This document shows positions 2,444 through 50,914 of a stretch of DNA of 64,000 bases, one piece after another. The notes beneath the pieces were generated by a model. That model saw only the letters and a program-made list of their open reading frames with translations, was not told the DNA's origin and did no database searches. Position 1 is the stretch's first letter, and each line of letters starts with the position of its first letter. The DNA lies in the IMG/VR virus record IMGVR_UViG_3300033182_000980, positions 248,001 through 312,000 of that record; one strand, 5' to 3'. A program made the translations under genes and the position numbers.

Positions 2444-2486
2444 GTTATCACCAGTAGTCTAGTGGGTTAATACTAGACTACCGATG

Positions 2487-2498
2487 ATAAATAAACTA
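2487..2498 (-). promoter_or_regulatory. Putative late promoter TA-N5-TTTAT (TAGTTTATTTAT)
   Basis: One of 12 similar motifs; about 45 nt upstream of the baseplate gene. Confidence 0.65.
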
Positions 2499-9847: not shown

Positions 9848-9888
9848 GATATATCTCCTTTGTTTGTTTATTTACTTACAGAGGAGAT

Positions 9889-9900
9889 ATAAAGAAACTA
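9889..9900 (-). promoter_or_regulatory. Putative late promoter (TAGTTTCTTTAT)
   Basis: Matches the motif, 42 nt upstream of the ATG at 9847. Confidence 0.65.
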
Positions 9901-12660: not shown

Positions 12661-13228
12661 CTGACTTAACCTCTTCTGGTTCGGGTGTGGTTTCGACACC
12701 AAGTGATTTCTTAACCTTTGCTTTGAACATCTTGATAACGAACGCATTTAAAGCACCCGCACTCGCACCCATATAGACATCAATCATCATAAATGGCTTT
12801 GATAAGGTGACTGCAATACCCGCTCCTGTTAAAACAGCAACAAGTCGGATCACAGCGTCAGCCTTCTCTTTACAGGTTTTGAAGATGAAGGGCTTAATGA
12901 TCTGAGTGATCGCTAGGCTCAAGATAGCGGCGTTGACTACAAGATACACATGACCCATAAAGACATCATGTGTTTCACGACCTTCAGCTTTCCAAGGAAT
13001 ATACTCCATATACTGTGTGCAGGCTACACCCTCTTCGTATATTTTACATTCTTGGTTTTCTTCACCACATAGAAGATCATTACCCTCTATGATTTCGCAC
13101 AGCCTCGGTTCAGACTCCCCATCTTTATTCATGGTTTGACAGAGGATTGTATGAACATCAACAAACTGACAATGGTCTGGTAATGCGTGTAGTGGCTCTG
13201 CACTTATAGGTATGTTATGTTTAGCCAT
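12653..13228 (-). CDS. Membrane protein, holin-like C-terminal part
   Basis: Cys-rich N-terminus followed by about three hydrophobic segments and a charged tail; late motif upstream. Confidence 0.4.
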   Translation of the reverse strand: MAKHNIPISAEPLHALPDHCQFVDVHTILCQTMNKDGESEPRLCEIIEGNDLLCGEENQECKIYEEGVACTQYMEYIPWKAEGRETHDVFMGHVYLVVNAAILSLAITQIIKPFIFKTCKEKADAVIRLVAVLTGAGIAVTLSKPFMMIDVYMGASAGALNAFVIKMFKAKVKKSLGVETTPEPEEVKSDD

Positions 13229-13266
13229 GATTCACCTCGCTTCTTTTTATTTAATAAAGCAAGGCG

Positions 13267-13278
13267 ATAAACAAACTA
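13267..13278 (-). promoter_or_regulatory. Putative late promoter (TAGTTTGTTTAT)
   Basis: Identical 12-mer to the one upstream of the tail tube gene (49991). Confidence 0.7.
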
Positions 13279-26764: not shown

Positions 26765-26776
26765 TAGTTTCTTTAT
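26765..26776 (+). promoter_or_regulatory. Putative late promoter (TAGTTTCTTTAT)
   Basis: Identical to the 9889-9900 motif. Confidence 0.65.
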
Positions 26777-26814
26777 GACTCACTTTATTCAACCATTTGA
26801 AAGTTGGAGTCATT

Positions 26815-27858
26815 ATGAAAGTCATTGAGAACACGAAAGGCTTGGTCTATTTCCATGCCCCCAAGTCTAAAGAAAAGCACATCACCAAGACATTAACCGA
26901 GGATCTTTTTTCCGACATCGGTAATGATATGTACGAGAACAGGCTTACCGACTGGGACGGATTCAGCTGGAGTGGTGAGGAGACTGATGCTTTCTTTGAT
27001 GAATGTATGCCCATTGTTCGTAAGAACATAACACTAGAAGTCTTTCCTCGAAGCAGATATGGGTACGACTGTACGATGTTTCGTTTCCATCTTGACTTTG
27101 CAGGCATGGAGCGAGACTTAGCTCGTAAGATCAGAACTCTAAAGTTAAAGGGTAAGCGTTCATCAAGGGATAGGGTAGAGGGTTGGAGTATCACAGTCCC
27201 TTCACTAGCTTTCAATCATGTGTCCTCTGCTTTAAAGAGCATTGGTATTAAATGGGAGTCATCTAAAACATCTAGCTACAATGGAGAGCTAAACATGAGA
27301 AGATCAGCATCAGAAATCATCAATGACCTTGAATCCCGTATTGCCCGACTTGAGTCGGGAAGTTTCAATGTCGGAGATCAAGTAGAATGTGTTGTGCTTG
27401 GAAAACAAGTCAAAGGGGCTATCAAAGCAGACCACTTTGGAAAGTATGTCTTTGTAGACTTTGGCAGTCAAACTCTAGCTGTGCCTTATGAGGACTGTGA
27501 GCTTGTTAATCAAACGACTGCACCTTGGAATCCCAAAGATATGTTTAGGGATCTAGCTAGGTCTTTCCCTAGTTTACCTAGAGGTCAAGCGTACTCTAAA
27601 AATGGTAGTACCCAAATCATTGTGTCCGACATTGGAAAACATTCAGCTCGGATTAATATAGCTGGTCCTACCTATGGAGTCGCCAAAAAGATCATGGCAA
27701 AGATTAGTAAGTTGCTCGCTAAAAAGTATGGGTTTGAAATGGTGAGGTATGACACCCTAGCACTTAATGATGGGAGCGGATACAAGTATACGATTGAAAT
27801 GAGTTCTATGGGGTCAATCAGTTTCGGTTCTAGTGTAGAGACTATTAGGTTGTATTAA
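26815..27858 (+). CDS. Hypothetical two-module protein with internal MRRSASE leader at 27295
   Basis: GGAG RBS before ATG 26815; internal GGAGAG + ATG at 27295 encoding MRRSASEIINDLESRIARLE. Confidence 0.6.
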   Translation: MKVIENTKGLVYFHAPKSKEKHITKTLTEDLFSDIGNDMYENRLTDWDGFSWSGEETDAFFDECMPIVRKNITLEVFPRSRYGYDCTMFRFHLDFAGMERDLARKIRTLKLKGKRSSRDRVEGWSITVPSLAFNHVSSALKSIGIKWESSKTSSYNGELNMRRSASEIINDLESRIARLESGSFNVGDQVECVVLGKQVKGAIKADHFGKYVFVDFGSQTLAVPYEDCELVNQTTAPWNPKDMFRDLARSFPSLPRGQAYSKNGSTQIIVSDIGKHSARINIAGPTYGVAKKIMAKISKLLAKKYGFEMVRYDTLALNDGSGYKYTIEMSSMGSISFGSSVETIRLY

Positions 27859-28181
27859 AATCTAGGTTCTCTACCTCGACACCATTTGGACTCATCTTCA
27901 GTCCAATAGAGCCTAGCCTTACCACGCTTCTTCTTTAGAGCCATCTCTGCTTTCATGGCTTCTGATCTGTTAGCGTATGTGCCATAGGTACACATCAACA
28001 CCCAAGGTCGGTGCTTAGAGGTGTACTTAGCACCGCCTTTGATTTCTCCATTGTGCTGCCGTAGCCTCCGATTAACATCTGTGGTGCTACCCACATAGAA
28101 GAAACCAGGTAGCTGTTTACCTGTCTTAGCTGATCTTCTGATCTGCTGACTCTGAATGACATATACGACCCATTCGCTCAT
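27855..28181 (-). CDS. GIY-YIG nuclease (SLX1-like)
   Basis: WVVYVI...FYVGSTTDVNRRLRQHNGEIKGGAKYT...RPW; start MSEW with AAGGA RBS. Confidence 0.9.
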   Translation of the reverse strand: MSEWVVYVIQSQQIRRSAKTGKQLPGFFYVGSTTDVNRRLRQHNGEIKGGAKYTSKHRPWVLMCTYGTYANRSEAMKAEMALKKKRGKARLYWTEDESKWCRGREPRF

Positions 28182-28186
28182 GTTTG

Positions 28187-28198
28187 TAGTTCCTTTAT
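28187..28198 (+). promoter_or_regulatory. Putative late promoter (TAGTTCCTTTAT)
   Basis: Matches the motif, 41 nt upstream of the ATG at 28239. Confidence 0.6.
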
Positions 28199-28238
28199 AT
28201 CTTGTCACATAGCGATTATATGACGAAGGAATAATACC

Positions 28239-28689
28239 ATGAGAAATCATAACAAGATGGCAAGTCGGGTCGCATATCGCTACATGAAGCAAGCTGGACT
28301 TTTGAGCAAGATTGTAAACTTCTTCTCGGAGTCTCCTCGTGAGAAAGCAAAGAAGCCAGTTTACGATGTCGCTAAGTTTTGGGTGACCGCAGGGATGTAT
28401 GGCACGACTATGGGAGAGGTTTCTAGGGAGCTAAAAACTCAAAGGCAAAGACACAGCGATTATTGATGTCAATGGTCGTAAAGTTAAGCTCTCTCTTGAG
28501 ATGGATCGTGTTAAGATGAAAGATGACGGAGGCATCAAAGGCAACATCTTCGTTGCGATTTCTCTTACAGGGGTAGACGAGAATGTTCCTAAGAGGGATC
28601 TTGAAAAGATGCTTATGCAGATTGTGAAAGAGACTCGTCTTAGGAATGTGTTTACCTCAACCCCTGTGGAACACCCAAGGATGGGCTAG
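28239..28689 (+). pseudogene. RVAYRY-tagged gene split by a +1 frameshift in an A5 run (28433-28437); sequencing error, pseudogene or programmed shift
   Basis: Removing one A joins 28239..28466 and 28501..28689 into a 149-aa ORF (...SRELKLKGKDTAIIDVNGRKVKLSLEMDRV...). Confidence 0.6.
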
Positions 28690-31835: not shown

Positions 31836-32204
31836 ATGAGCATGGCGATGGATCTTTACCGAGAAGTAATGAGTGAGTTTAATGATGAGAGCCCGTACTA
31901 TCGACCTCACCTCGCTGATCATGGGTATGACTACGAGGACGGATACTGGTTCGCTGTGTTCGTAAACAAAGATGTAGTCGCTCGTAAAGACTACCCTAAG
32001 TTTGGCATCAAGAAAGGCGAGAAGCATCGCTTCATCAAGAGTAAGTACATCTGTGACGAGACAGGCTGTAGCTCTTGGGAAGTGGAGCGTAAAGCTCTTT
32101 CACCCACAGTAAGCCCCACACCTGTTATGTCTGATAGAGACGCTTGGTATGCCGAGGGATATAAATCAAGTTGGACTGGATCTTGGACTCAAAAGGATAA
32201 ATAA
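31836..32204 (+). CDS. Hypothetical protein
   Basis: AAGGAG RBS before ATG 31836. Confidence 0.6.
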   Translation: MSMAMDLYREVMSEFNDESPYYRPHLADHGYDYEDGYWFAVFVNKDVVARKDYPKFGIKKGEKHRFIKSKYICDETGCSSWEVERKALSPTVSPTPVMSDRDAWYAEGYKSSWTGSWTQKDK

Positions 32205-32277
32205 TGGCATACGCTTTAATCTGTGGACTGATAGAGGTGTCAATCATAATCACCTTAATAAAGGCATGGAGGTCATA

Positions 32278-32535
32278 ATGAGACAAGTAGAAGCTATCAG
32301 CTATCTGTTAGGGCAAGACCCCCGACCTAACGGATCAAATTTTAACTGGTCGGGTATCACCCATTCGGGCGAACGCCTTAGCCTCTATTACGAGGTCAAC
32401 CGTAAACTTAGTGATCTACATTGGGTGGAGGTCATGGACTCACGAGGCGTACTAGGCTTACCTACAGATGACTTTGGTCTAGTCGGTATCAATATCTCGG
32501 ACTTACCCAAATACTTTAAGCAAGAGGAGAAATGA
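32278..32535 (+). CDS. Hypothetical protein
   Basis: GGAGG RBS before MRQVEAISY. Confidence 0.45.
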   Translation: MRQVEAISYLLGQDPRPNGSNFNWSGITHSGERLSLYYEVNRKLSDLHWVEVMDSRGVLGLPTDDFGLVGINISDLPKYFKQEEK

Positions 32536-32536
32536 A

Positions 32537-32866
32537 ATGGGTTTAGATCAATATGGTTTCGCTCGTAAAGAGGGCAAGAAAGATACACAACTCATGCAAT
32601 GGCGTAAGCACTCAAACCTTGAGGGTTGGATGCAAGAGCTTTACGCTGAAAAGGGTGGCACAGAAATGTTCAACTGCGTTGAGCTATCCCTCACCAAAGA
32701 GGATTTGTTGAGGCTCAAGGCAGAGTACAAGAGTTTAGAGGAAGCATCTGGGTTCTTTTGGGGTACAAGTCAATCCTCGGATGATGTGGACACTGGTCGC
32801 TTTATTGAGCTTGCCCTTGTCGCTTTAGAGGAGGGGTATGAGGTCATCTACACATCCTGGTGGTGA
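32537..32866 (+). CDS. Conserved phage protein (MGLDxY...WRK...GFFxG...YxSxW type)
   Basis: MGLDQY, WRKHSNLEGW, GFFWG, YTSWW; GAGGAG RBS. Confidence 0.7.
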   Translation: MGLDQYGFARKEGKKDTQLMQWRKHSNLEGWMQELYAEKGGTEMFNCVELSLTKEDLLRLKAEYKSLEEASGFFWGTSQSSDDVDTGRFIELALVALEEGYEVIYTSWW

Positions 32867-33835
32867 CGATTTATATTTTCTTTATAAGATCTCCATTGGT
32901 GCTAACCCTTAACCGACAATGGAGAATGACCTATGAGAAGATCAGCATCAGAAGTAATCAGAGAGCTTGAGTCAAGAGTCGATCAGCTTGAAAAACAAGC
33001 TGGTCTATTTGATTTCTTTCGCAGTGAGAAAACGATTCAAACCGAGACTAAAGAGCTTGAGAAGTTAGTCAAGTCTATACGAGGTGTCAGTCGTGTTGCC
33101 ATTGACATCAAAAACCGAGATCGTTGCAAAATGAAAGTAACCTATGAAGGTGAAACCCTTATTCTTAAAGGGTGGTGCAATGATGATGAGTTAGGTATTT
33201 ATGGTAAGGGCAAAAGAGCTGTCTATATACCAGGTAGTCCAGGTGTCGGACTTTTGACAACACACGGCATAAGATCAAGGGGAGGAAGACCTTCATCTAA
33301 AGGGGGGAAGATTAACACTTATGTATTTGGGGGTCAGATAAGACGAGGCAAAGTGATTACAGTCAGTCTCTACACCATGAATGGATCTCGTGTTAAAGAT
33401 ACCAAAGAACTTGAGGCTTTCTTAGATTTGATTTTAGAGGATGCACTCGATGATGGACCTCGCAAGAGGGAAGAAGAAATCGAGAGACAGAGGATTGAGA
33501 AGGAAAGGGTTGAACAGGAGAGGGTACACAACAGAAAGGTGCAGAAGGAGAGGGAAGAGCGTAAGCGTCAAAAGAGGGAGATGTTTGAAAAGAACAGACA
33601 AAAAAAGATGCAGGGTAGGCAAGCCAGCCTAAGCTCAAACCGATTAGTAAAGAGCAGAAGCCATTGGTGATGGATATGGAGTCATCTACACTTCGTGGTA
33701 GTGATTTTTATAAATTATTTATAGGTTCTCATAAGTGATCTAACCTTAACCCCTATGGAGAATGAACATGAGAAGGTCTGCTTCAGAAGTTATCAGAAAC
33801 CTTGAAATGAGGATTGCTCGTCTTGAGCGAGTTGC
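32833..33835 (+). repeat. Imperfect direct repeat (about 32833-33000 and 33671-33835): gene tail + late promoter + RBS + MRRSASE leader
   Basis: GTCATCTACAC.TC.TGGT.GTGA, TA-N5-TTTATA, CTAACC(C)TTAACC, ATGGAGAATGA, ATGAGAAG.TC.GC.TCAGAAGT.ATCAGA in both copies. Confidence 0.8.
32933..33670 (+). CDS. Hypothetical protein with MRRSASE leader (probable virion cargo)
   Basis: MRRSASEVIRELESRVDQLEKQAG; late motif at 32874-32885. Confidence 0.65.
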   Translation: MRRSASEVIRELESRVDQLEKQAGLFDFFRSEKTIQTETKELEKLVKSIRGVSRVAIDIKNRDRCKMKVTYEGETLILKGWCNDDELGIYGKGKRAVYIPGSPGVGLLTTHGIRSRGGRPSSKGGKINTYVFGGQIRRGKVITVSLYTMNGSRVKDTKELEAFLDLILEDALDDGPRKREEEIERQRIEKERVEQERVHNRKVQKEREERKRQKREMFEKNRQKKMQGRQASLSSNRLVKSRSHW

Positions 33836-34496
33836 GAAGTCAGATGGTCCAGTGCTGAAAGCCATCAATTCTTCAAATGCTTACCATCACCCGCATTATG
33901 GTGGAAGCTACACCACTGCGATGCTTTTTGAGTTAAGATCTAATAAGAGATGGGAAGCAGTCCTTGACGGAAATGTTGTCATCGTATCTCAAGGATTGAT
34001 CGACGGTAAAACCAAGACTACTAAGAAAACCTTTGATGACGGTGTTGATGCTGAACGACACTTTAGGAGAATCTTGGGTAGGAAACTTAATCAAGGTGGG
34101 GTGGATTGGACATCTGCGTTCTATGCAAAAGACGGAGATAAGAGCGAGAGAGGAAGGCATCATGGTCCTTCCGAAATAATGTATGGTCGTTATCCTACCC
34201 CTAATAACCTACAGGAGAGATACCACGCAACCGCTTTACCAGACATTAAATCTGCTCTTGACGAGTTAGAGGGTATGGCTATTCCTGCTCTTATGGAAGA
34301 TGACTTTCATAGCGGGGATAGACATCTACAACACGCACTCGTACTGATTGGTAGCCACAACGGTCATGAAGATTTGTCCACCTCATTATTTGAGGGGATC
34401 TTATCTGCCAAGCAAAACTTAAAGAGTGGATTAGACTCTGATCAAGTAATCAGAGATATATCTGATCTCGTGGATCAGATCAGACGCAAGATGTGA
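33768..34496 (+). CDS. Hypothetical protein with MRRSASE leader; weakly WGR-domain-like middle
   Basis: MRRSASEVIRNLEMRIARLERVA; SNKRWEAVLDGNVVIVSQGLIDGKTKTTKKTF...AERHF..ILGRKLNQG resembles a WGR domain; late motif at 33711-33722. Confidence 0.6.
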   Translation: MRRSASEVIRNLEMRIARLERVAKSDGPVLKAINSSNAYHHPHYGGSYTTAMLFELRSNKRWEAVLDGNVVIVSQGLIDGKTKTTKKTFDDGVDAERHFRRILGRKLNQGGVDWTSAFYAKDGDKSERGRHHGPSEIMYGRYPTPNNLQERYHATALPDIKSALDELEGMAIPALMEDDFHSGDRHLQHALVLIGSHNGHEDLSTSLFEGILSAKQNLKSGLDSDQVIRDISDLVDQIRRKM

Positions 34497-34505
34497 TTAG
34501 ATAAG

Positions 34506-34853
34506 TTAAGATTTCCACCAGTCATCGAACGCTCCCCATTCGATCATCTCATATAGGTCAGTAGGGATCGACCCGACACAATCATGGTGAAACCACTCAC
34601 CATTTTGCCTTATACGCCACTTTTTGAGTTCTTCATGTAGGTGGGCTTCCCTCCACCCTAAACCTTCAAAAGAGGCTATAAGGCGAAGCTCATGTGAAGC
34701 ACCTGTTTGGAGTTGCTTGAGTCTCTTCTTAGGGTGCTTGGATCGACCTATCTTAATCATGCCTGTCTTGCTCGCCTGGATGAAGTACAGATAGTCTCCC
34801 TGCTTTCGTTGCTTTTGCTCACGATTTCTATTTAACATTTCTTCTAAGGTCAT
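34506..34853 (-). CDS. T5orf172/MUG113-type GIY-YIG domain protein
   Basis: YLYFIQ...IKIGRSKHPKKRLKQLQTG...EAHLH...GEWF. Confidence 0.85.
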   Translation of the reverse strand: MTLEEMLNRNREQKQRKQGDYLYFIQASKTGMIKIGRSKHPKKRLKQLQTGASHELRLIASFEGLGWREAHLHEELKKWRIRQNGEWFHHDCVGSIPTDLYEMIEWGAFDDWWKS

Positions 34854-34883
34854 CGTATTACTCCTTGTGTGTATTATATGAGC

Positions 34884-36059
34884 TTAAAAGAAATAATCAT
34901 CCCTAACCCATTTAGGTTCGGATGTTAAACCCTTACTCCAAATAAAGATCGGCTCACAAGTTGGGAGGTCTGTTTTCTGACCTCCTCGCTCGGACATACG
35001 ATAGCCAATCACACCCTCATAGGTCGCTCCTAAGTTTCTCATGTGTTCAAGCATCGGTGTGCAGATGTCCTCACCTTTTTTATCTGCGATGTTGATTGCT
35101 ATCCTACCACCCTCTTTAAGTACCGACCAGCATTTAGTGAGGGTAGCGAGTAAGAAATCGTTGACCCAATCTTTAAGATCTGGATAACGCTTCCACGATT
35201 GAGTCTCCTCTTGGCTGTACCTCTCGATGTCGAAGTAAGGTGGACTCGTAAATACAAAGTCCACCTTAACATCAGATAGATCAGCATCCTCTGCTGGAGA
35301 GCAAATAAATCGAGTGGTCTTACCTGTATCGCAGAGATTGACGATTTGCTGGTAAGGCTCATGAAGGTTCGTATTAGGATCAATCCCGATATAAGACTCC
35401 GCGTTCGAGGCAAGGAAACCGACAAGCCTATCGCCCCACCCTGCCGAGAAATCTAAGACACTTTTGGCTTGGAACAGATCGTAGAGAGCTTTAGCTGATT
35501 CGGCTTTAAACTGACTTGCCATATATGTGTGCATCTTTAAGGCTCTTCTAAGGGTTTGCTTATTGACTCCACCTCTCTCATAGATGTCTCTCTCACAAAT
35601 GCCAAAGAAGCATCTTAAGAATGAGTTGCTTTTACTGGCATTGACCCACTCATCATAGGGTGAGTTTCCTTGAGTTCGATAGCTACATTTCATCCTCTGT
35701 GATTGGGTAAACAGATTAGAGACAGCCTTACCTTTGTAGTAGCTGTTAAGGTAAACATATTTACCTTGATAGGTTGTGTCTAGGGGTGTAGCTTGGCGAG
35801 GTGCGATCCATTCTTCAAATACGAATGGATCTTCCTTTGCTTTAAGATCATTAAAGTCGTTTATTGCCTGTCCTACTGTGTACTCGGAGTAGGGGTAAGG
35901 CAAAGACTCAATGATGGGTGCGATGTGATCTTTGATCTGTTCCTTAGTGTATGTCTCACGAAGCATACTCCACTCATTAGGGAGTATGTGAATATATCCG
36001 TCTTTGATATACTCAATGTCATCTAGCGACTTGAGTGTGGTTTTATAGTCAAAGTACAT
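34884..36059 (-). CDS. DNA amino-methyltransferase paralogue 2
   Basis: LDFSAGWGDR, FTSPPYF, EPIFIWSKG. Confidence 0.85.
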   Translation of the reverse strand: MYFDYKTTLKSLDDIEYIKDGYIHILPNEWSMLRETYTKEQIKDHIAPIIESLPYPYSEYTVGQAINDFNDLKAKEDPFVFEEWIAPRQATPLDTTYQGKYVYLNSYYKGKAVSNLFTQSQRMKCSYRTQGNSPYDEWVNASKSNSFLRCFFGICERDIYERGGVNKQTLRRALKMHTYMASQFKAESAKALYDLFQAKSVLDFSAGWGDRLVGFLASNAESYIGIDPNTNLHEPYQQIVNLCDTGKTTRFICSPAEDADLSDVKVDFVFTSPPYFDIERYSQEETQSWKRYPDLKDWVNDFLLATLTKCWSVLKEGGRIAINIADKKGEDICTPMLEHMRNLGATYEGVIGYRMSERGGQKTDLPTCEPIFIWSKGLTSEPKWVRDDYFF

Positions 36060-36893
36060 TTAAGCACCTAAATTCCAGAATAGGGTTTTCCCTTTTAACT
36101 TGTATGGATTTTCAGTGATCCACTCCCATGCTTTTTTATCCCAGAGTTTGTTGCAAGGGAATGGGGTTGTGAAGTGATCCATCTCATCGTAGAAATCGTA
36201 CTCGGACTTATAAATCTTGAGGCAAGATGGGACACTTCCTAGATTAGAGATCAGAGCCTTCTCTATAGTCTTAACGCTAGAGGTAGCAACGATTACAATC
36301 TTCTTCCCTTCAAAGTCTGGCTCAAACATAACACCAGCGATGTAGTCAACACCTAAGAACCCTTTAATCAGCCCAACACTTGTAATGCCACTACCCCCTT
36401 CAATGACTAGTGTGTTGTATTCATTCCGAGAGAAGAACTCTTTAGAACGCTCTGTCCAATAGTTGATGTAGACAGGGTGGTTGAACGCATCTGGACACAT
36501 CTGCCAATCGTTTTGAGAAGCTATTTTCTTTGTCTGCGAGGACAAGATAGCTACCATGTTGTGCTTTAAGGGGATCAACTCTCCACCATATAACTCGACC
36601 TTTTTCAGCATCTCTTGAGAGTACGCTTTTGTGTTCGGGTAAGCTATTTTGATGTCATAGCCTAGCTCTTTGCCCCAATAAGCTAACGCCCACCCTGTGT
36701 ACGATCCTCTGACTGTGAGGTGTACAATGGGTTTATCTTTTGTGAAGTAGTCCGAGGCGAGAAGTCTCCTTATGCCTTCAAGTTTCGCCCAAGGGGGGAG
36801 ATCGAGGGAGCCGTTGAGTAGATCATCTCTTTTGACATCGACATTTTTGTGTTTGACTTTGTATGTTTCTACTGGAGTATCAAAGTTTAACAT
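36060..36893 (-). CDS. PLP-dependent fold-type II enzyme (ACC deaminase/D-cysteine desulfhydrase/TrpB-like superfamily)
   Basis: VKRDDLL...WAKLEG (candidate Schiff-base Lys), GSYTGWALA, GGSGITSVG, LFWNLG; start at MLNFDTP. Confidence 0.75.
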   Translation of the reverse strand: MLNFDTPVETYKVKHKNVDVKRDDLLNGSLDLPPWAKLEGIRRLLASDYFTKDKPIVHLTVRGSYTGWALAYWGKELGYDIKIAYPNTKAYSQEMLKKVELYGGELIPLKHNMVAILSSQTKKIASQNDWQMCPDAFNHPVYINYWTERSKEFFSRNEYNTLVIEGGSGITSVGLIKGFLGVDYIAGVMFEPDFEGKKIVIVATSSVKTIEKALISNLGSVPSCLKIYKSEYDFYDEMDHFTTPFPCNKLWDKKAWEWITENPYKLKGKTLFWNLGA

Positions 36894-37791
36894 TGAACAT
36901 CGCCTTTTCTTCAAACTCTATGTCTTTGAGTATTTGGTTGTATATCGCTCTAGTGTCTTTATATGAAGTCCCTGCTAATAAGACTCTTCTGTGTAAGCCC
37001 TTTAAGCCTCCACTTTTCCCTGTGGTGTGGAAGTTGGATCTGTTCGTTTTGTGTTTATCAAAGTATTCTTTATGCGTATGTTCGGTAATGAACCATTTGG
37101 GCTGGATCTTATTACTAGCTGGATTGAGCAGTAGCTGATCCCACAGTAGAGATTTACACAAGGACTCTATTCGGGGTGTGCGAAATGGACACAACACTTC
37201 AATACCCTTACTTTTTAAGAACTGTCTTATCACCCACAGGTTGTGAGGGCTTCCAGAAGGGTACTTTTCTTCTAGCTCTTTCTCGACTAAGTTTTTGAAA
37301 TAGTTATCTAGGGCAACCCTAGACCCTCCTTTTTTGTATGCTCCCCAAAGGCTGTTAACTTTCGCTCCGCTGTGAGCAAACATCGTAGTGTAAAACCCTG
37401 TGATCAGATAGGGTGTGGTCATTTGATTTCTCATGTAAGAATAAGCATGACAAACCTGTGTCTCTATATTCCTCGTTGTGCGTGTGGTCTTAATGACTTC
37501 CTTAACTTCCCTTAACAAGTCATCTCGAATAGGGTCAGAGGGGATGGTAGCCACTTTCAAGGGTAGGTCATAATGCTTTGCTATTTGTTGAGCATACTCA
37601 AGGTCTTTGGAATACTCGCCCTCAATCTCAAAGGTGATCAGCTCTTTTGGCGGCCTTCTTAGCTCTATCATTGTGAACAATAGCATGGAAGAATCTATCC
37701 CACCAGAAAACGAGAGACTAATGTCTTGGGGTAGGTTTCTTACCGAGTCATAGATTGCTTCTTTAAATTCCTGTACCCATGTGTGTGTCAT
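36880..37791 (-). CDS. Asparagine synthetase-like PP-loop ATP pyrophosphatase (synthetase domain only)
   Basis: LSFSGGIDSS PP-loop; DLEYAQQIAKHY, LITG, EVLCPF; no glutaminase domain. Confidence 0.75.
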   Translation of the reverse strand: MTHTWVQEFKEAIYDSVRNLPQDISLSFSGGIDSSMLLFTMIELRRPPKELITFEIEGEYSKDLEYAQQIAKHYDLPLKVATIPSDPIRDDLLREVKEVIKTTRTTRNIETQVCHAYSYMRNQMTTPYLITGFYTTMFAHSGAKVNSLWGAYKKGGSRVALDNYFKNLVEKELEEKYPSGSPHNLWVIRQFLKSKGIEVLCPFRTPRIESLCKSLLWDQLLLNPASNKIQPKWFITEHTHKEYFDKHKTNRSNFHTTGKSGGLKGLHRRVLLAGTSYKDTRAIYNQILKDIEFEEKAMFNVKL

Positions 37792-38470
37792 ATCTTCTCA
37801 TCAACTCTCTTGAGTTTTTTAACTCGTTGTTTTGAGTCCTTACATGACAAGAATGAGCAAACGAGGTTACGAGTCCGAAATCTAAACAGCCACTCTCTTT
37901 ACAGAGGAAATCGCATAGGTCAACGAGAGCCATGTAGTCAGCATATCCAGACTTGGACACAGCTTGGCTTCTAAAGTTAGCTGTTAAGTTAAGTTTCCCA
38001 CCTCTAGGTTTCAAGTCGATTGTCAGTAAGCAAGGCATACCGCCCATAACCTTTTTACCATCCGACTGAGGATCATATACACCAATGACAATCGTTTTAG
38101 CTTGCTTGTTTTCCCTTAGCCTCTTAATCGCCTGCTCGATTTGATTGAAGCCTCCGTTCCAAGAAATCATTCGCCCCCAATAACTATTCGTCCATTTCCC
38201 CTCTTTGTTCTGCTGATACTCTAACATCTGTGGGAACAACATATTAGGTTCTGGCTTCACAAAGGTAACAGACTTAGCATAGTCGATACGCTCATCTCCA
38301 AAGATGTCTCTAAACTCTTTATCAAACACAGGGCAGACCTCGGAGGATTTGATCTCTATACCCATGTTTAAAATCTCATAAAGACCTCCCATATTCATGC
38401 CTTTGTCAAGGATGTCTTGAGTCGCTTTGACCCATGCTTCTGCACAGTTGTTTGCTGTTATGTGATACAT
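37763..38470 (-). CDS. Thymidylate synthase/dCMP hydroxymethylase-fold protein (divergent, cytosine-type Asp)
   Basis: YWGR, NQIEQAIKRL, MPCL (catalytic Cys), FRSQAVSKSGYADY, HSCH. Confidence 0.8.
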   Translation of the reverse strand: MYHITANNCAEAWVKATQDILDKGMNMGGLYEILNMGIEIKSSEVCPVFDKEFRDIFGDERIDYAKSVTFVKPEPNMLFPQMLEYQQNKEGKWTNSYWGRMISWNGGFNQIEQAIKRLRENKQAKTIVIGVYDPQSDGKKVMGGMPCLLTIDLKPRGGKLNLTANFRSQAVSKSGYADYMALVDLCDFLCKESGCLDFGLVTSFAHSCHVRTQNNELKNSRELMRRYDTHMGTGI

Positions 38471-38473
38471 ATT

Positions 38474-39679
38474 CTACACTCCAAAGAAGTTGTCTTGATG
38501 CCATTTAGGTTCGGGAGCTTCACCCTTACTCCAGATAAAGATCGGTTCGCAAAACACATCTATCTTCGACAACTCATCGTTTAAGGAATGGTGATTGCCT
38601 GGCCTCTTAGACATACGATAACCCATGACTCCTTCATAGGTTGCCCCTAGTGAGTCCATGTACTCGATCATGGGCTGACATACTCGTATGTCTCCTCTTA
38701 CTTTATCCGAGATGTTCACGCATATACGACCCCCATCTTCTAAAGCGTCCCAACATTTTTTTAGAGTCGGGTAGAGGAAGCCATTAAGCCAGTCATCTGT
38801 ATCTGGATAACGCTTCCATGATTGCGTGTCCTCTTGGCTGTACTTCTCGGTATCAAAGTAAGGTGGACTAGTGAATACAAAGTCTACTTTAACATCGGAT
38901 AGATCAGCATCCTCTGCCGGCGAACAGATAAACCGAGTGGACTTATTCGTAGAACAATAATCAGCGATCTTCTGATAAGGTTCATGGAGCTTAGTGTTAG
39001 GGTCTAGTCCGACATAAGACTCCGCATCCGAGGCTAAAAACCCAACTAACCTGTCGCCCCACCCCATAGAGAAATCTAAGACTCGTTTAGCTCCGAAGAA
39101 GTTATACATAGCCTTAGCTAAGGTAGGCTTAAACTGAGCTGGAATATATCCAGACATACCGATAGCGTTTACAAGTATCTTGCTATTCACACCCTTTGAC
39201 GGATCGTATAGTGTCCATAGAGGTCTAAGGAACGCTCTCTTTTTGGACTTGAGGTCTGTTCGAGTCCATTGCCTCATTGCACTTGGGAACTGCTTATGAT
39301 CAACCTCTAAACGCATAGGCTCACTATATTGGTTAGACACCTTGAGTCCTTTGTTATTAGGGGCGAAGTAAAGATACCTCCCTTGATAGGTATGGGGCTG
39401 ATCTATCTCGCACCGAGGCAACCCCCACTCTCCCTCAATCGGGGTCATGTAATCGGATTGAACCTCTAGCCAGTCTTTCTTGATCTCTTGAGGAGTGTAC
39501 TTAGTGAATGGGTAAGGTAGCCCTTCAATCTTTGCCGACAGGTAGTCTGTGATCTCATCTCTACTAAAGTTATCTACCATCTCTAACCACTGATGCGGTG
39601 GTATAAAGATTTCTTGTCCGCTCACAACAGCATAATCTTCAAGACTATCTTTTTTGGTTTTTTCATAATCAAAGAACAT
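38474..39679 (-). CDS. DNA amino-methyltransferase paralogue 3
   Basis: LDFSMGWGDR, FTSPPYF; near-duplicate of 40876..42081. Confidence 0.85.
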   Translation of the reverse strand: MFFDYEKTKKDSLEDYAVVSGQEIFIPPHQWLEMVDNFSRDEITDYLSAKIEGLPYPFTKYTPQEIKKDWLEVQSDYMTPIEGEWGLPRCEIDQPHTYQGRYLYFAPNNKGLKVSNQYSEPMRLEVDHKQFPSAMRQWTRTDLKSKKRAFLRPLWTLYDPSKGVNSKILVNAIGMSGYIPAQFKPTLAKAMYNFFGAKRVLDFSMGWGDRLVGFLASDAESYVGLDPNTKLHEPYQKIADYCSTNKSTRFICSPAEDADLSDVKVDFVFTSPPYFDTEKYSQEDTQSWKRYPDTDDWLNGFLYPTLKKCWDALEDGGRICVNISDKVRGDIRVCQPMIEYMDSLGATYEGVMGYRMSKRPGNHHSLNDELSKIDVFCEPIFIWSKGEAPEPKWHQDNFFGV

Positions 39680-39708
39680 ACTTAAATCCTTTCAAGATAC
39701 TTATAGGA

Positions 39709-40872
39709 TTATACTCCAAAGTAGTTATCTTGATGCCACTTAGGTTCTGGAGCTTCCCCTTTACTCCAAATAAAGATCGGTTCGCAGAATACCTCTCCTA
39801 GATTCATTCCGTTTCGCTTTTGCATCTTGTAGCCAATGACACCTTCATAGGTAGCCCCTAATCTCTCCATGTGGTCAATCATTGGCGAACAGATGTCTAA
39901 TCCTTTTTTGTCGGCTATGTTGATTGCTATCCGACCACCTTCTTCTAACGCTTCATAACACTTAGTAAGCGTGGGTAGCAGAAATGATTTAATCCACTGT
40001 TGAGGATTTCTGTATCGTTTCCACGATTGCGTATCTTCATCGCTATATCTTTCTATGTCGAAGTAAGGGGGGCTTGTAAAAACGAAGTCTACTTTAACAT
40101 CGGATAGATCAGCATCCTCTGCTGGAGAACAGATAAATCGAGTCTCCTTGTTCGTATCGCAGAAGCGTACAATCTGTCCATAAGGCTCATGGAGCTGGGT
40201 ATTAGGATCAATGCCGATATAGGACTCGGCATTGGAGGCGAGGAAGCCAACTAACCTATCGCCCCAACCAGCAGAGAAATCTAAAACCCGTTTAGCTCCG
40301 AAGAAGTTATATAAGGCGAGGGCAGTCTCTGGTTTAAACTGACTTGCCATATAGGTGTGCATCTTTAAGGCTCGGTACAGGACGCTGTTATTAAGCCCAC
40401 TTGCCTTGACCTCATCTTTAAGTATTCCAAACAGACACCTCAAAAATGAGCTTGGCTTGTTTGGGTGTTGCCATTCAAACATCGGGGAGTTTCCGTTATG
40501 GTATCCACAACACATCCTCTGCACTTGAGTAAACTGATTGGAGACTTTTTGACCCTTATTACTTGGCGTAAAGTATAAGGCTCTACCCTTATAAGTAAGC
40601 TCTATTGCTTCTGTTTGTCTTGGTGCGTTCCAAGTACCCAAAGTGTATGTAGGGGTAGCACCTTGAACTTGTGACCAGTCGCCTTGCGTTTCAAGTTCAA
40701 GGTATCTTCGTAGAGGGAAGGGCTTATCTTTTATGATCTCGGTTAAGTGTTGTTTTATCTCTTGGTCAGAGTAAAACTTTTTAAGGGCTTCCCAGTCCGA
40801 TGGTTTGCAGGACACAGTATCTGTGAAATACTCTGATATATCTTTCTTTTCGATCTCATAGTCAAAGAACAT
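39709..40872 (-). CDS. DNA amino-methyltransferase paralogue 4
   Basis: LDFSAGWGDR, FTSPPYF; closest to 34884..36059. Confidence 0.85.
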   Translation of the reverse strand: MFFDYEIEKKDISEYFTDTVSCKPSDWEALKKFYSDQEIKQHLTEIIKDKPFPLRRYLELETQGDWSQVQGATPTYTLGTWNAPRQTEAIELTYKGRALYFTPSNKGQKVSNQFTQVQRMCCGYHNGNSPMFEWQHPNKPSSFLRCLFGILKDEVKASGLNNSVLYRALKMHTYMASQFKPETALALYNFFGAKRVLDFSAGWGDRLVGFLASNAESYIGIDPNTQLHEPYGQIVRFCDTNKETRFICSPAEDADLSDVKVDFVFTSPPYFDIERYSDEDTQSWKRYRNPQQWIKSFLLPTLTKCYEALEEGGRIAINIADKKGLDICSPMIDHMERLGATYEGVIGYKMQKRNGMNLGEVFCEPIFIWSKGEAPEPKWHQDNYFGV

Positions 40873-40875
40873 AGC

Positions 40876-42081
40876 TCATACCCCAAAGTAGTTATCTTGA
40901 TGCCATTTAGGTTCGGGTGCTTCCCCCTTACTCCAAATGAAGATAGGCTCACAGAATATATCTACCTTAGCCAGCTCATCGTTTAAGGAATGGTGATTAC
41001 CTGGCCTCTTAGACATACGATAGCCCATCACCCCCTCATAGGTTGCTCCTAGTGAGTCCATGTACTCAATCATAGGTTGGCACACCCTAACATCTCCATG
41101 TACTTTGTCGGAGATGTTTACACAGATACGACCTCCTTCTTCTAAAGCGTCCCAACACTTCTTGAGCGTTGGGTAGAGGAAACCTTTAAGCCAGTCATCT
41201 GTTTCTGGATATCGCTTCCAACTCTGTGTATCTTCTTGACTGTACTTTTCGGTATCAAAGTATGGTGGGCTGGTAAATACAAAATCAACTTTAACATCGG
41301 ATAGGTCAGCATCTTCCGCAGGGGAACAGATGAACCTCGTTTTCTTATTGGTGTTGCAATAAGCCTCTATCTGTCCATAAGGTTCATGGAGCTTGGTATT
41401 AGGGTCAATCCCGACATAAGACTCTGCATCAGAAGCTAAGAATCCGACTAACCGATCACCCCAACCCATAGAGAAATCTAGCACCCTTTTAGCTCCGAAG
41501 AAGTTATACATGGCTTTGGCTAGAGTAGGCTTGAACTGAGCCGGTATGTAATAAGACATATTAATGGCGTTATAGAGCATCTTGCTGTTAACCCCTTTCG
41601 ACCTATCGTATAGGGTGAAGAAGGGTCTTAGGAAGTATCTCTTGTCGCCCTTCATCCCTATGCGAGTCCATTGAGTGATGGCACTTTTATATTGTAGGTG
41701 GTCAACCTCTAAACGCATAGGCTCGGTGAACTGATTAGATACCTTGAGTCCTTTGTTATTAGGAGCGAAATAAAGATACTTACCTTGATAAGTATGAGAC
41801 TCATCTATCTCACAGCGTGGTAATCCCCATTCTCCCTCAATCGGAGTCATGTAATCAGATTGAACCTCTAGCCAGTCACGATGTACCTCTTGGGGAGTGT
41901 ACTTGGTATATGGGAAAGGCAGACCTTCAATCTTAGTAGATAAGTAAGTGATGATCTCATCACGAGTGAACTTATCTAGCATCTGTGACCATTCGTGAGG
42001 GGGTATAAAGATTTCTTGTCCTCTTACGACTTCATATTCTTCTATGTTGTCTTTGGCTTTCTTTTCATATTCAAAAAACAT
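40876..42081 (-). CDS. DNA amino-methyltransferase paralogue 5
   Basis: LDFSMGWGDR, FTSPPYF. Confidence 0.85.
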   Translation of the reverse strand: MFFEYEKKAKDNIEEYEVVRGQEIFIPPHEWSQMLDKFTRDEIITYLSTKIEGLPFPYTKYTPQEVHRDWLEVQSDYMTPIEGEWGLPRCEIDESHTYQGKYLYFAPNNKGLKVSNQFTEPMRLEVDHLQYKSAITQWTRIGMKGDKRYFLRPFFTLYDRSKGVNSKMLYNAINMSYYIPAQFKPTLAKAMYNFFGAKRVLDFSMGWGDRLVGFLASDAESYVGIDPNTKLHEPYGQIEAYCNTNKKTRFICSPAEDADLSDVKVDFVFTSPPYFDTEKYSQEDTQSWKRYPETDDWLKGFLYPTLKKCWDALEEGGRICVNISDKVHGDVRVCQPMIEYMDSLGATYEGVMGYRMSKRPGNHHSLNDELAKVDIFCEPIFIWSKGEAPEPKWHQDNYFGV

Positions 42082-49990: not shown

Positions 49991-50002
49991 TAGTTTGTTT
50001 AT
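49991..50002 (+). promoter_or_regulatory. Putative late promoter of the tail operon (TAGTTTGTTTAT)
   Basis: Consensus motif upstream of the tail tube gene. Confidence 0.7.
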
Positions 50003-50065
50003 AGTCCGATTATAAATGAATAACAAACTTTCCCTTAGCTCATGTCAATCATCTAGGAGGACATC

Positions 50066-50914
50066 ATGCCAGCAACAAATAAAGATATGAACCCACAGGC
50101 AGGTATTGCAGGTACATCTGCCCTGTACAAGTTCAACTCATCTCCAAACACTCGTGCAGTTGTTTCACAGAAGTGTCGCATCCTCACCCCTGCTTATGGA
50201 AGTGGTGACGGGCTTCTATATCAAATCGGTGTGGTTGCTTCATTCTCAATCTCGGCTTCTTCAAGAGGTGCAGAGCCATATCGTGGTGTCGGTTTCGGTG
50301 ATCAGATCGCTGAACTCGTTCCAAGTGTTTCTGACCCACACAGTGCGTCATTCACTCGTACACTCCTTTACCTCTCAAACGCTCACCAAGCATTTGGTTA
50401 TGCTGGTGGTGTTGATGGTCCAGTTCGTACACTACAACAACACAGATGGCCTTTCGACATTGAGCAACAGCTTGTGTTCTCAACTCTTGCTGACACCGAA
50501 GCACCAGCAAATGGTCCTAATGGTCTTGTGAATGTCGATTTCTCATCTCAAAACGCTACCAATGGTGCTTTGTCTCCCGCACAGCGAGAGGATTTGGACG
50601 CAGGCGAGAGAGATGGTACTCCAGGTGAAGGGGGTTCTCAGAAGCACAAAGCTCTCATCACTTATTGTGAGGGTTGCTGGATCACCTCGATGGATCATGG
50701 CGAGATGTCAGCCGATGGTGGCATCATTCAGCAATCTATCGAAGCTCAGATTACTGATGTGCATGACCTATACTCTACCTATGGTGAGTTCATGGCTACA
50801 GGTAATGATCCGACACTTGGTCAGAACAGCTCACTCCTTTATAATGAGCGAGCGACTACTGCTGTTGAGCGTTCCACAGGAGCGGCAGCAACAGGTGTAG
50901 CACCAGGCGAGTAA
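50066..50914 (+). CDS. Tail tube protein (putative)
   Basis: AGGAGG RBS; IGVVASFS...GFGDQIAELVP...PFDI...YCEGCWITS beta pattern; first gene ahead of chaperones and tape measure. Confidence 0.7.
   Translation: MPATNKDMNPQAGIAGTSALYKFNSSPNTRAVVSQKCRILTPAYGSGDGLLYQIGVVASFSISASSRGAEPYRGVGFGDQIAELVPSVSDPHSASFTRTLLYLSNAHQAFGYAGGVDGPVRTLQQHRWPFDIEQQLVFSTLADTEAPANGPNGLVNVDFSSQNATNGALSPAQREDLDAGERDGTPGEGGSQKHKALITYCEGCWITSMDHGEMSADGGIIQQSIEAQITDVHDLYSTYGEFMATGNDPTLGQNSSLLYNERATTAVERSTGAAATGVAPGE

What the first reader, a model, noticed from the sequence alone, without database searches (positions are those of the whole stretch)
32833..33835. Cassette accretion footprint: gene tail + late promoter + RBS + tag duplicated in front of a different cargo
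Seen: DNA after gene 32933 repeats the DNA before it, including an orphan remnant of the upstream gene's 3' end (GYEVIYTSWW-stop versus GYGVIYTSW-stop), the late motif, CTAACC(C)TTAACC, GGAGAATGA and about 22 codons of leader; beyond the leader the two proteins are unrelated. Inference: recombination at this module adds or swaps cargo genes, building an expandable array of packaged effectors without a dedicated integrase.
Basis: partly seen in the sequence, partly recalled or inferred. Interest (0 to 1): 0.65.

Follow-up and report, generated by a model that had tools for sequence, protein, structure and literature searches.

The report
Tagged-cargo gene array in huge phage
An uncultured 376-kb marine phage has a swap-prone slot holding two unrelated genes that carry the same start signals and 23-residue protein tag, plus a scar showing the second came from a relative; the layout resembles phage T4's injected internal proteins, but the tag's job is untested.

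Summary
Window 32831-32991 repeats at 33669-33826 (121/156 identical; local score 67 against 11.6±1.8 for shuffles). The repeat covers the last 12 codons of gene 32537-32866 (geneX), a promoter-like box, a conserved 5' UTR with its ribosome-binding site (SD), and a 23-residue leader. Beyond the leader the two proteins are unrelated.

The unit is not local. At least 31 ORFs across this 375,691-bp phage carry the leader, and it is common in related marine viral contigs.

Relatives keep one alternative cargo in the same slot, between geneX and a GIY-YIG/T5orf172 gene:
- cargo A, full length 314 aa;
- cargo B, 242 aa;
- a 187-aa cargo, or a deleted remnant of it;
- nothing.

This genome is an A-type allele. 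The last ~221 nt of gene A were replaced by a B-type segment that begins 36-45 nt inside geneX, which explains the orphan tail. The left join is non-homologous. A second assembly carries the same junction.

Two points are not: the crossover of this event did not lie in the shared module, and "packaged effectors" remains an inference by analogy with the T4 capsid-targeting sequence.

The parts
32149..32535 (+). Small gene before geneX (called o32149 here; 84-90 aa in relatives). It is homologous (32-37% identity) to the C-terminal domain 'C' of full-length cargo A.
32537..32866 (+). geneX: conserved 109-aa gene of unknown function and left border of the slot. Its last 12 codons are the first copy of the duplicated tail.
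   Evidence: (104 homologues, no Pfam or PHROG family)
32831..32991 (+). Repeat copy A: geneX tail, promoter-like box, 5' UTR, SD and most of the leader.
32874..32885 (+). Promoter-like box of cassette A (TATTTTCTTTAT). It departs from the genome-wide consensus TAGTTTnTTTAT at one base.
32890..32932 (+). Conserved 5' UTR of cassette A, with TAACCCTTAACC and ATGGAGAA (SD GGAG at 32921-32924).
32933..33001 (+). Leader A: 23 codons, MRRSASEVIRELESRVDQLEKQA. The model of the full-length homologue P0106 places its equivalent leader in an N-terminal helix (residues 5-25) followed by a low-confidence stretch (23-31).
32933..33670 (+). Cargo A gene, 245 aa. It is a truncated form of a 314-aa protein (leader, alpha/beta core, long charged helix, domain C) and lacks domain C. 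It ends in a new tail, ..KSRSHW-stop.
33657..33671 (+). Left recombination junction. A-type homology (90.9% to L171) ends at 33656; B-type homology (83.5% to L173) starts at 33669.
   Evidence: an X2 contig continues past 33653 with the A-type sequence
33660..33704 (+). Orphan remnant of a geneX 3' end (..AIGDGYGVIYTSW-stop). It is decayed (TGG to TAG) and its frame is open for 17 codons only.
33669..33826 (+). Repeat copy B: orphan tail, promoter-like box, 5' UTR, SD and leader.
33711..33722 (+). Promoter-like box of cassette B (TAAATTATTTAT). It departs from the consensus at two bases.
33768..33836 (+). Leader B: 23 codons, MRRSASEVIRNLEMRIARLERVA. The SD GGAG at 33757-33760 favours the ATG at 33768 over the one at 33762.
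33768..34496 (+). Cargo B gene, 242 aa: leader helix, flexible linker, WGR-like beta domain (48-107), disordered stretch, four-helix bundle (148-241).
34506..34853 (-). T5orf172/MUG113 (GIY-YIG-type nuclease domain) gene, convergent with cargo B. It is the right border of the slot and a candidate homing endonuclease.
27295..27858 (+). Another leader cargo (187 aa), read in frame inside a 353-aa ORF (26797-27858). Its 80%-identical orthologue occupies the geneX slot in relative L120. It too is followed by a convergent GIY-YIG gene (27855-28292).

Best explanation
The locus is a hypervariable slot in an uncultured 375.7-kb marine phage. It lies between a conserved 109-aa gene (geneX) and a GIY-YIG/T5orf172 gene.

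The slot is filled by 'leader cassettes'. Each cassette has the phage's own promoter-like box, a conserved 5' UTR with the SD, a 23-residue N-terminal amphipathic helix (consensus MRRSASEIIRNLEMRIARLERQA) and an unrelated cargo domain. At least 31 such genes are scattered over the genome.

Related phages carry alternative single alleles in this slot: A fused to C, B, a 187-aa cargo, or none.

Shown: this genome is an A-type allele in which the last ~221 nt of the A.C fusion gene were replaced by a segment of a B-type allele. That segment began 36-45 nt before the stop of the donor's geneX and ran through the module and cargo B towards the T5orf172 gene. The result is a truncated cargo A, an orphan geneX tail and a second complete cassette.

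Inferred: the exchange happened between co-infecting relatives. The right side was resolved in shared flank homology and the left side by an illegitimate join, possibly during repair of a break made by the neighbouring GIY-YIG enzyme.

Inferred by analogy only: the leader is a protein-level address tag that brings diverse cargos to one common destination. The most likely destination is the assembling capsid, as with the T4 capsid-targeting sequence, perhaps with removal by the ClpP-type head maturation protease.
For: Repeat and scar.

Mosaic structure:
- Window 32001-33656 is 90.9% identical to L171, which carries geneX, a 314-aa cargo A and T5orf172.
- Window 33669-35000 is one continuous 83.5% match to L173 756-2106, which carries geneX, cargo B and T5orf172. 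The match starts inside geneX.
- A contig of run X2 continues with the A-type sequence past 33653.
- The same junction occurs in a second assembly, L178, at 100% identity.

Slot contents in relatives.

A.C is an older fusion of two cassettes. Stand-alone leader+C (P0113, 81% identity) and stand-alone leader+A-core proteins exist.

Leader family:
- 22 strict matches and about 31 loose-motif leader ORFs after two doubtful ones are set aside.
- More than 100 stretches in IMG/VR contigs.
- Cargos are mutually unrelated except for three weak pairs.
- The peptide is under selection: amino-acid identity 75%, third codon positions 52%, dN/dS 0.19 with dS about 1.2.
- The leader is modelled as a separate helix followed by a low-confidence stretch.

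Circumstantial support for a capsid role:
- A portal gene and a ClpP-type head maturation protease (phrog_94, E 1.7e-43) flank a 573-aa protein with an internal leader and a WGR domain.
- The promoter box also precedes an Mtd_N tail-fibre gene.
- In-frame multi-leader fusions are kept as open reading frames.

Both GIY-YIG/T5orf172 genes of the genome abut leader genes.
Against: - No public run or relative holds the B-type donor itself. L173 is only 83% identical and 2.8 kb long, so the donor is inferred.
- The right crossover cannot be placed: T5orf172 is equally similar to L171 and L173 (91%).
- Both promoter-like boxes at this locus deviate from the consensus, so expression of A and B is not assured.
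- Nothing shows packaging, cleavage or injection. No T4-type (S77) or HK97-type (S78) protease was found and no major capsid protein was identified.
- Cargo charge is the same as the genome background.
- The leader-protease complex prediction gave no answer.
- The leader is not found in any deposited phage, so no proteomic data can be borrowed.
Confidence: 0.7

Rival explanations
1. Two-unit ancestor. The ancestor already carried geneX-A-C-geneX'-B. This genome lost C and most of geneX' by one deletion. The single-cargo relatives lost the other unit by separate deletions or by unequal crossing-over between the geneX copies.
For: Deletions and in-frame fusions are frequent in this slot (L124 internal deletion; L122 and L171 fusions). 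The left breakpoint falls exactly at the start of domain C. Domain C is homologous to the gene that precedes geneX, so a C-geneX unit mirrors o32149-geneX.
Against: None of about 10 distinct relatives carries two geneX copies or both A and B. This model needs more events than one exchange between A-type and B-type alleles. The geneX of L173 is a normal orthologue (92.6% amino-acid identity) and is contiguous with module B.
Confidence: 0.12
2. Simple local tandem duplication of tail, module and gene, followed by divergence of the second copy.
For: The repeat units are direct and adjacent, and the two genes have nearly equal lengths (245 and 242 aa).
Against: There is no similarity after residue 23. 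The predicted folds differ: WGR plus helix bundle for B, an alpha/beta core plus long helix for A. Each has its own paralogue elsewhere in the genome and its own orthologue as the sole occupant of the slot in other phages.
Confidence: 0.03
3. Homing-endonuclease-driven exchange. The GIY-YIG/T5orf172 gene next to the slot cuts genomes of co-infecting relatives nearby. Repair copies the nuclease gene together with the adjacent cassette. On this view the slot's variability and the scar are by-products of a selfish nuclease, and the shared module plays no part.
For: The genome has only two GIY-YIG/T5orf172 genes, and both are convergent 3' neighbours of leader genes. The same pairing occurs in L124 and L120. 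In L122, no nuclease gene is called and the slot holds no cargo. This model is compatible with the best explanation.
Against: Only two cases in this genome. The 115-aa protein is a nuclease domain with no obvious DNA-binding domain. The P0001 contig and L124 carry T5orf172 but no intact cargo. Most leader genes have no such neighbour.
Confidence: 0.3
4. The leader is not a capsid address. It may be a generic short coiled-coil that docks many proteins onto another common partner, such as a phage-built compartment, a host complex or a chaperone. Alternatively the module plus leader is simply a shared high-expression start cassette.
For: The leader has hydrophobic residues at heptad-like spacing (residues 8/9, 12, 16, 19) and is modelled as a free helix. 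No packaging data exist, cargo charge is unremarkable, and the promoter box also drives non-structural genes such as a topoisomerase IB-like gene and an HNH endonuclease.
Against: A pure expression role does not fit the saturated synonymous sites combined with a conserved peptide, nor the leaders retained in frame inside fusion proteins. A leader protein sits between the portal and protease genes.
Confidence: 0.35
5. Assembly artefact joining an A-type and a B-type strain.
For: The record is a metagenomic assembly, and both allele types circulate in related samples.
Against: The junction does not lie in sequence shared by the two types. The orphan tail is diverged from the intact geneX tail (29/36 bases, premature TAG). 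A contig from another sample's assembly is identical across the junction.
Confidence: 0.02

Closest known systems
Internal proteins of T4 and other T-even phages (IPI, IPII, IPIII and over 30 variants) with the capsid-targeting sequence (CTS), and their polymorphic IP loci (Repoila et al. 1994, as cited in PMC3012670 and PMC2839356)
   Same: A short conserved N-terminal peptide sits on otherwise unrelated small proteins. The conserved regulatory sequence lies just upstream of each gene. The loci differ between related phages in the number and identity of cargos. The T4 cargos are described as a diverse set of injected defence proteins with only the CTS conserved (PMC3012670; PMC2839356).
   Different: No sequence similarity to any deposited phage. 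The leader is 23 residues, against about 10 for the CTS (T4 figure from my own knowledge). There are at least 31 tagged genes in one genome, dispersed on both strands rather than held at two loci. In-frame multi-leader fusion proteins occur. No T4-type gp21 protease was found; a ClpP-type one is present instead. Packaging, cleavage and injection are untested.
[quoted passage not shown] 2010, PMC2839356; Comeau et al. 2014, PMC4122927)
   Same: Repeated small regulatory cassettes flank non-essential variable genes in hyperplastic regions. Insertions, deletions and replacements between close relatives end at or near them (abstract; here).
   Different: PeSLs are sigma-70-like early promoters plus terminator stem-loops, and recombination occurs between the PeSLs themselves. 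Here the motif is different, no conserved stem-loop exists, the repeat extends into the coding region as a protein tag, and the join studied here lies outside the module.
Free-standing GIY-YIG homing endonucleases of T4-type phages (Seg proteins; from my own knowledge)
   Same: A small GIY-YIG-type gene sits between conserved genes, shows presence/absence differences among relatives, and lies beside a region of allele replacement.
   Different: No activity or target site is known. The protein is only 115 aa and lacks a recognisable DNA-binding domain.
Integron gene cassettes
   Same: An expandable array of promoter-proximal, unrelated cargo genes at one site.
   Different: No integrase gene lies at the locus. 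No attC-type recombination site was looked for. The repeats are promoter/UTR/leader units, and each cassette brings its own promoter.

Membership tests
T4-type CTS-bearing internal proteins | Short N-terminal peptide shared by otherwise unrelated small proteins of one phage | tested here: met
   22 strict and about 31 loose matches to the leader. Cargos are unrelated apart from 3 weak pairs.
T4-type CTS-bearing internal proteins | Sequence homology of the tag or cargos to T-even internal proteins | tested here: not met
   tblastn of the leader alone and of cargos A and B against 50,697 deposited phage records found no match. PHROGs found nothing.
T4-type CTS-bearing internal proteins | T4-type prohead protease (gp21, Peptidase_S77) that removes the tag | tested here: inconclusive
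   PF03420 was not found, but the control genomes did not ring either. PF04586 is absent. A ClpP-type head maturation protease is present. No cleavage site could be assigned.
T4-type CTS-bearing internal proteins | Proteins are present in the capsid and injected with the DNA | not testable with these tools
   Uncultured phage, no proteome. RNA or protein data are absent.
T4-type CTS-bearing internal proteins | Polymorphic locus: number and identity of cargos differ among close relatives | tested here: met
   The slot holds none, a 187-aa cargo, A.C, B, A+B, a 251-aa cargo or a three-unit fusion.
PeSL cassettes | Promoter followed by a conserved stem-loop terminator | tested here: not met
   RNAalifold predicts no pairs on 53 module copies. 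The proposed 9-bp stem is paired in 61.3% of cells, equal to the shuffle mean of 61.6%.
PeSL cassettes | Rearrangement endpoints lie in the repeated cassettes | tested here: inconclusive
   Endpoints lie in or at the module in L124, L122 and the fusion genes. The G000 join lies outside it.
Integron | Integrase gene at the array | tested here: not met
   Pfam scan of the ten neighbouring proteins found no integrase or recombinase. The only Phage_integrase/Topoisomerase IB hit is about 219 kb away in the genome.
WGR-domain proteins (cargo B) | Match to Pfam PF05406 or the WGR fold | tested here: inconclusive
   Cargo B itself has no Pfam hit at E 0.01. Its paralogue hits WGR at E 1.2e-12. The best Foldseek hits of the model are 2ra8 and PARP1 WGR, at E 1e-3 to 1e-2. 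JGI names the homologue P0109 a WGR protein.
Free-standing GIY-YIG homing endonuclease | GIY-YIG-type nuclease domain in a small intergenic-type gene | tested here: met
   PF10544 at E 3e-10 and PF13455 at E 1e-10 for window 34506-34853. PF01541 at E 1e-13 for window 27855-28292.
Free-standing GIY-YIG homing endonuclease | Site-specific cleavage of nuclease-less alleles and biased inheritance | not testable with these tools
   Needs biochemistry or mixed infections.

The most novel reading that the evidence does not exclude
The 23-residue leader is a previously undescribed capsid-loading and processing signal of a clade of uncultured marine huge phages. It would direct 30 or more unrelated proteins per genome into the head for delivery to the host. 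These include WGR DNA-binding proteins and a DUF4258 toxin-like protein. In-frame multi-leader fusions would act as polyproteins cut apart by the ClpP-type head protease. Slots next to GIY-YIG genes would be where new cargos are traded between relatives.
Probability: 0.35. Interest if true: 0.8.

Novelty: new variant of a known kind. Interest (0 to 1): 0.62.

Why it matters
If the leader is a capsid address, this phage clade carries by far the largest known repertoire of tagged, co-delivered proteins. It has about 31 per genome; T4 has a handful (T4 figure from my own knowledge). In that case the leader would mark candidate early-acting effectors or anti-defence proteins directly in metagenomes, with no culture needed. 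It would also offer a short tag for loading foreign proteins into large capsids.

Independently of function, the locus is a clean natural record of how phage accessory genes are gained. Alternative alleles sit in one slot, a dated scar marks the addition, cassettes fuse in frame, and a possible nuclease driver lies next door.

Tried and rejected
- **5' UTR hairpin.** In copy A, CTCCATTGG pairs with CCAATGGAG and would sequester the SD. Rejected as a family feature: RNAalifold predicts no pairs on 53 copies, and the stem is paired in 61.3% of cells against 61.6% in shuffles, with no covariation.
- **Module as substrate for homologous recombination.** Weakened: the longest exact runs between the two copies are 11 nt, and the leader paralogues have saturated synonymous sites.
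- **Close relatives among deposited phages.** megablast and tblastn found none. The DNA polymerase's best hit is a 485-kb uncultured phage at 45% identity.
- **The search for related loci with geneX.** No confirmed hit; relatives came from the protein index instead.
- **Capsid and protease families.** T4-type and HK97-type protease and capsid Pfam models were not found. The major capsid protein remains unidentified.
- **PHROGs and Pfam on cargos.** Scans of about 30 cargos were almost all blank.
- **Basic charge of cargos.** No bias: median pI 6.4 against 6.2 for the background.
- **Public reads.** No run holds the stretch; only relatives' pieces were found, and no RNA.
- **Complex prediction of leader (residues 1-47 of cargo B) with the ClpP-type protease.** No answer, score 0.00; this is not evidence either way.
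- **ESM Atlas look-up of the 573-aa protein's N-terminal half.** Nothing usable.
- **Foldseek of the cargo A model.** No significant match.
Full report
**What the window is.** The window is bases 248001-312000 of a 375,691-bp IMG/VR virus record with 45% G+C, rated complete by CheckV. It has no near relative among 50,697 deposited phages. Its family-A DNA polymerase is 45% identical to that of a 485-kb uncultured phage. Homologues of local genes come from marine and estuarine metagenomes.

**Observation.** Window 32831-32991 and 33669-33826 align with 121 of 156 identical bases. The local score is 67, against 11.6±1.8 (max 21) for dinucleotide shuffles. Each copy contains:
- the end of a reading frame: GYEVIYTSWW-stop, the true end of the 109-aa gene 32537-32866 (here geneX), versus an orphan GYGVIYTSW-stop whose frame is open for only 17 codons;
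- an A/T-rich promoter-like box;
- a conserved UTR with TAACC(C)TTAACC and ATGGAGAA;
- an ATG and 23 leader codons.

After residue 23 the two proteins (245 aa and 242 aa) show no similarity.

**The module is genome-wide.**
- A DNA search of the whole genome with copy A gives 28 matches on both strands.
- A strict peptide pattern finds 22 ORFs starting with the leader (consensus MRRSASEIIRNLEMRIARLERQA). A looser pattern finds about 31 once two doubtful matches are dropped, and four of these have the leader inside a longer ORF.
- A degenerate DNA pattern for the first leader codons finds more than 100 stretches in IMG/VR contigs.
- Upstream of most copies lies TAGTTTnTTTAT at about -60, followed by a conserved UTR.
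- That box occurs 48 times in the genome, 40-65 nt before start codons of many other genes. These include a 2,084-aa Mtd_N tail-fibre protein, a topoisomerase IB-like gene and an HNH endonuclease. It is therefore the phage's own promoter type. A late class is plausible but not shown. Both boxes at this locus deviate from the consensus.
- Only the gene-tail part of the repeat is unique to this pair.

**The leader is a protein-level element.** Across 24 paralogues:
- codons 2-21 are 75% identical in amino acids;
- third codon positions are only 52% identical;
- dN/dS is 0.19 with dS about 1.2;
- serine switches between the TCN and AGY codon families.

The copies are therefore old and are not being homogenised, and the peptide is what is conserved. 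AlphaFold models place the leader in a separate helix (residues 5-25) followed by a low-confidence stretch.

**The cargos are diverse.**
- Among about 31 cargos, only three pairs show any similarity. These include A with the gene at genome 147797, and B with the C-terminal half of a 573-aa protein at genome 78106.
- Pfam and PHROGs are almost blank for them.
- Cargo B is WGR-like. Its paralogue hits PF05406 at E 1.2e-12, Foldseek's best hits are 2ra8 and PARP1 WGR, and JGI names a homologue a WGR protein. A C-terminal four-helix bundle follows.
- Cargo A has an alpha/beta core with a Gly/Arg-rich loop and a 70-residue charged helix. It has no PDB match.
- A and B are not homologous by any test available here.

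**The slot in relatives.** geneX has 104 homologues. Contexts were read:

| Relative | Content between geneX and the nuclease gene |
|---|---|
| Contig with the closest geneX (89%) | Nothing; T5orf172 follows directly |
| L122 | No cargo; a truncated module abuts T5orf172-like sequence |
| L120/L121 | One 187-aa cargo, 80% identical to the gene at window 27295-27858, i.e. at another site in this genome |
| L124 | A module followed by only the last ~28 codons of that 187-aa cargo, an internal deletion |
| L123 | A 251-aa cargo with half a leader |
| L171/L172 (flanks ~91% identical to this genome) | One 314/315-aa cargo A |
| L173 | One 242-aa cargo B (74% amino-acid identity) |
| G001 | A 445-aa protein made of three leader-cargo units fused in frame; the nuclease and methylase flank lies 28 kb away |

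The locus is thus far from invariant.

**How this array arose.** blastn shows the following:
- Window 32001-33656 is 90.9% identical to L171 up to 221 nt before the end of its cargo A gene.
- Window 33669-35000 is one continuous 83.5% match to L173. It starts 36 nt before the stop of L173's intact geneX and runs through module, cargo B, T5orf172 and methylase.
- The right flank from 34515 again matches L171 at 91%.
- The junction (33657-33671) has no evident homology.
- A contig of an independent run continues past 33653 with the A-type sequence.
- Cargo A is truncated from 314 to 245 aa and ends in four new residues.

HMMER against 1.8 billion representatives shows that the 314-aa protein is itself a fusion. 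Stand-alone leader + A-core proteins of 202-227 aa exist. So do stand-alone leader + domain-C proteins of 105-113 aa, up to 81% identical. The fusion joint retains the last residues of the second leader. This genome shares that joint.

The order of events was therefore:
1. an A + C array;
2. an A.C fusion;
3. replacement of the body of C by geneX tail + module + B.

The orphan tail has since decayed (TGG to TAG). A contig from a second sample's assembly is 100% identical across the junction, so the arrangement is real.

**Selection.**

| Comparison | dN/dS |
|---|---|
| Cargo A vs L171 | 0.21-0.26 |
| Cargo B vs L173 | 0.62 |
| geneX and T5orf172 | 0.09-0.16 |

The cargos evolve faster than the frame around them.

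**Mechanism of exchange.**
- The two module copies share exact runs of at most 11 nt, and the join lies outside them. This event was therefore not homologous recombination within the module.
- Other rearrangement endpoints do lie at or in modules (L124, L122, the fusions). Selection for intact expression signals could also explain that pattern.
- Pfam models find only two GIY-YIG/T5orf172 genes in the genome. Both are convergent 3' neighbours of leader genes (window 34506-34853 next to B; window 27855-28292 next to the 187-aa cargo). The same pairing recurs in relatives.
- Break repair triggered by such a nuclease is a plausible driver. It is inferred, not shown.

**What the leader does.**

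Shown:
- it is a conserved, separately modelled helix on about 31 unrelated proteins;
- it is kept in frame inside fusion proteins;
- one leader protein (573 aa, internal leader + WGR) lies between the portal gene and a ClpP-type head maturation protease.

Inferred by analogy with the T4 capsid-targeting sequence, where only the CTS is conserved among diverse injected internal proteins (PMC3012670):
- it is a tag that loads cargos into the prohead and is perhaps cut off.

Not supported by any direct evidence here:
- no T4-type protease or capsid gene was recognised;
- cargo charge is unremarkable;
- a leader-protease complex prediction gave no answer.

I put a virion-loading role at about 0.35-0.45. 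Another common docking role comes next, and a pure expression role is unlikely.

**Comparison with known systems.** The closest are the T-even internal-protein loci, which are polymorphic and have conserved upstream regulatory elements and a CTS (Repoila 1994, as summarised in PMC2839356). Next are PeSL-mediated modular shuffling (PMC2839356; PMC4122927). The differences here are:
- no sequence relationship to those systems;
- a longer tag;
- about 31 dispersed members;
- in-frame multi-unit fusions;
- no stem-loop;
- a different protease type;
- a GIY-YIG neighbour.

I rate it a new variant of a known kind.

**Verdict.** The accretion and swap reading is supported and is now documented with donor-type and recipient-type alleles. 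The claims that recombination occurred at the module, that no dedicated enzyme is involved, and that the cargos are packaged effectors are not established.

Noticed in passing
genome-wide; in the window e.g. 2443-2498 (-), 9847-9900 (-), 13228-13278 (-), 26765-26815 (+), 49991-50066 (+): The motif TAGTTTnTTTAT occurs 48 times, 40-65 nt upstream of start codons. In many non-leader genes the bases just after the box are a near-perfect inverted repeat of the SD region (for example genome 12010, 47461, 67291, 189956, 197827; window 2498, 9900). The transcript's 5' end could therefore pair with its own ribosome-binding site.
   Followed up: partly
window 27855-28292 (-) and 34506-34853 (-): These are the only two GIY-YIG/T5orf172-type genes found in the 376-kb genome. 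Each lies tail-to-tail against a leader-cargo gene. The same pairing is seen in relatives L120 and L124.
   Followed up: partly
window 26797-27858 (+); genome 78106-79827; L118 2955-4292 (-); L117 9833-10876 (-): Leaders also occur inside longer ORFs. These are in-frame fusions of two or three leader-cargo units, or of an unrelated N-terminal domain with a leader cargo. In the relative's 445-aa protein, the SD and ATG of the third unit were deleted, which left the frame open.
   Followed up: partly
window 32149-32535 (+) versus L171 5725-5945: The small gene preceding geneX is 32-37% identical to domain C, the C-terminal domain of full-length cargo A. In other phages domain C exists as a stand-alone leader-tagged protein. 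One small fold therefore occurs with and without the tag.
   Followed up: yes
window 34884-42081 (-): A run of genes with N6/N4 DNA methylase, PLP-dependent enzyme (PALP), asparagine-synthase-like and thymidylate-synthase-like domains, followed by further methylases. It is conserved in relatives (L122, L171) and looks like a DNA base-modification pathway.
   Followed up: no
genome 67345-67938 (+), locus L148: A 197-aa protein with a divergent leader-like N-terminus (..LLNLERRVADLE..) carries a DUF4258 domain (E 2e-5, at the cut-off). From memory, DUF4258 is a putative toxin-type domain.
   Followed up: no
genome 61721-63145 (+), locus L129: A 474-aa gene driven by the same promoter box matches eukaryotic-type topoisomerase IB (PF01028, E 1e-12) and Phage_integrase.
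   Followed up: no
window 9901-12747 (-): A 948-aa protein with two matches to tRNA nucleotidyltransferase PHROG families.
   Followed up: no
window 33768-34496 versus L173 858-1586: Cargo B evolves much faster than its flanks: dN/dS is 0.62, against about 0.1 for geneX and T5orf172 in the same pair of genomes.
   Followed up: yes
G001 (IMG/VR 3300025707_000006) 17.8 kb versus 46.2 kb: In this relative, the two flanks of the slot (geneX side and T5orf172/methylase side) lie 28 kb apart. Several leader genes, an actin/ParM-like gene and a metallophosphatase lie between them. This is a large rearrangement with a leader gene next to each end.
   Followed up: partly
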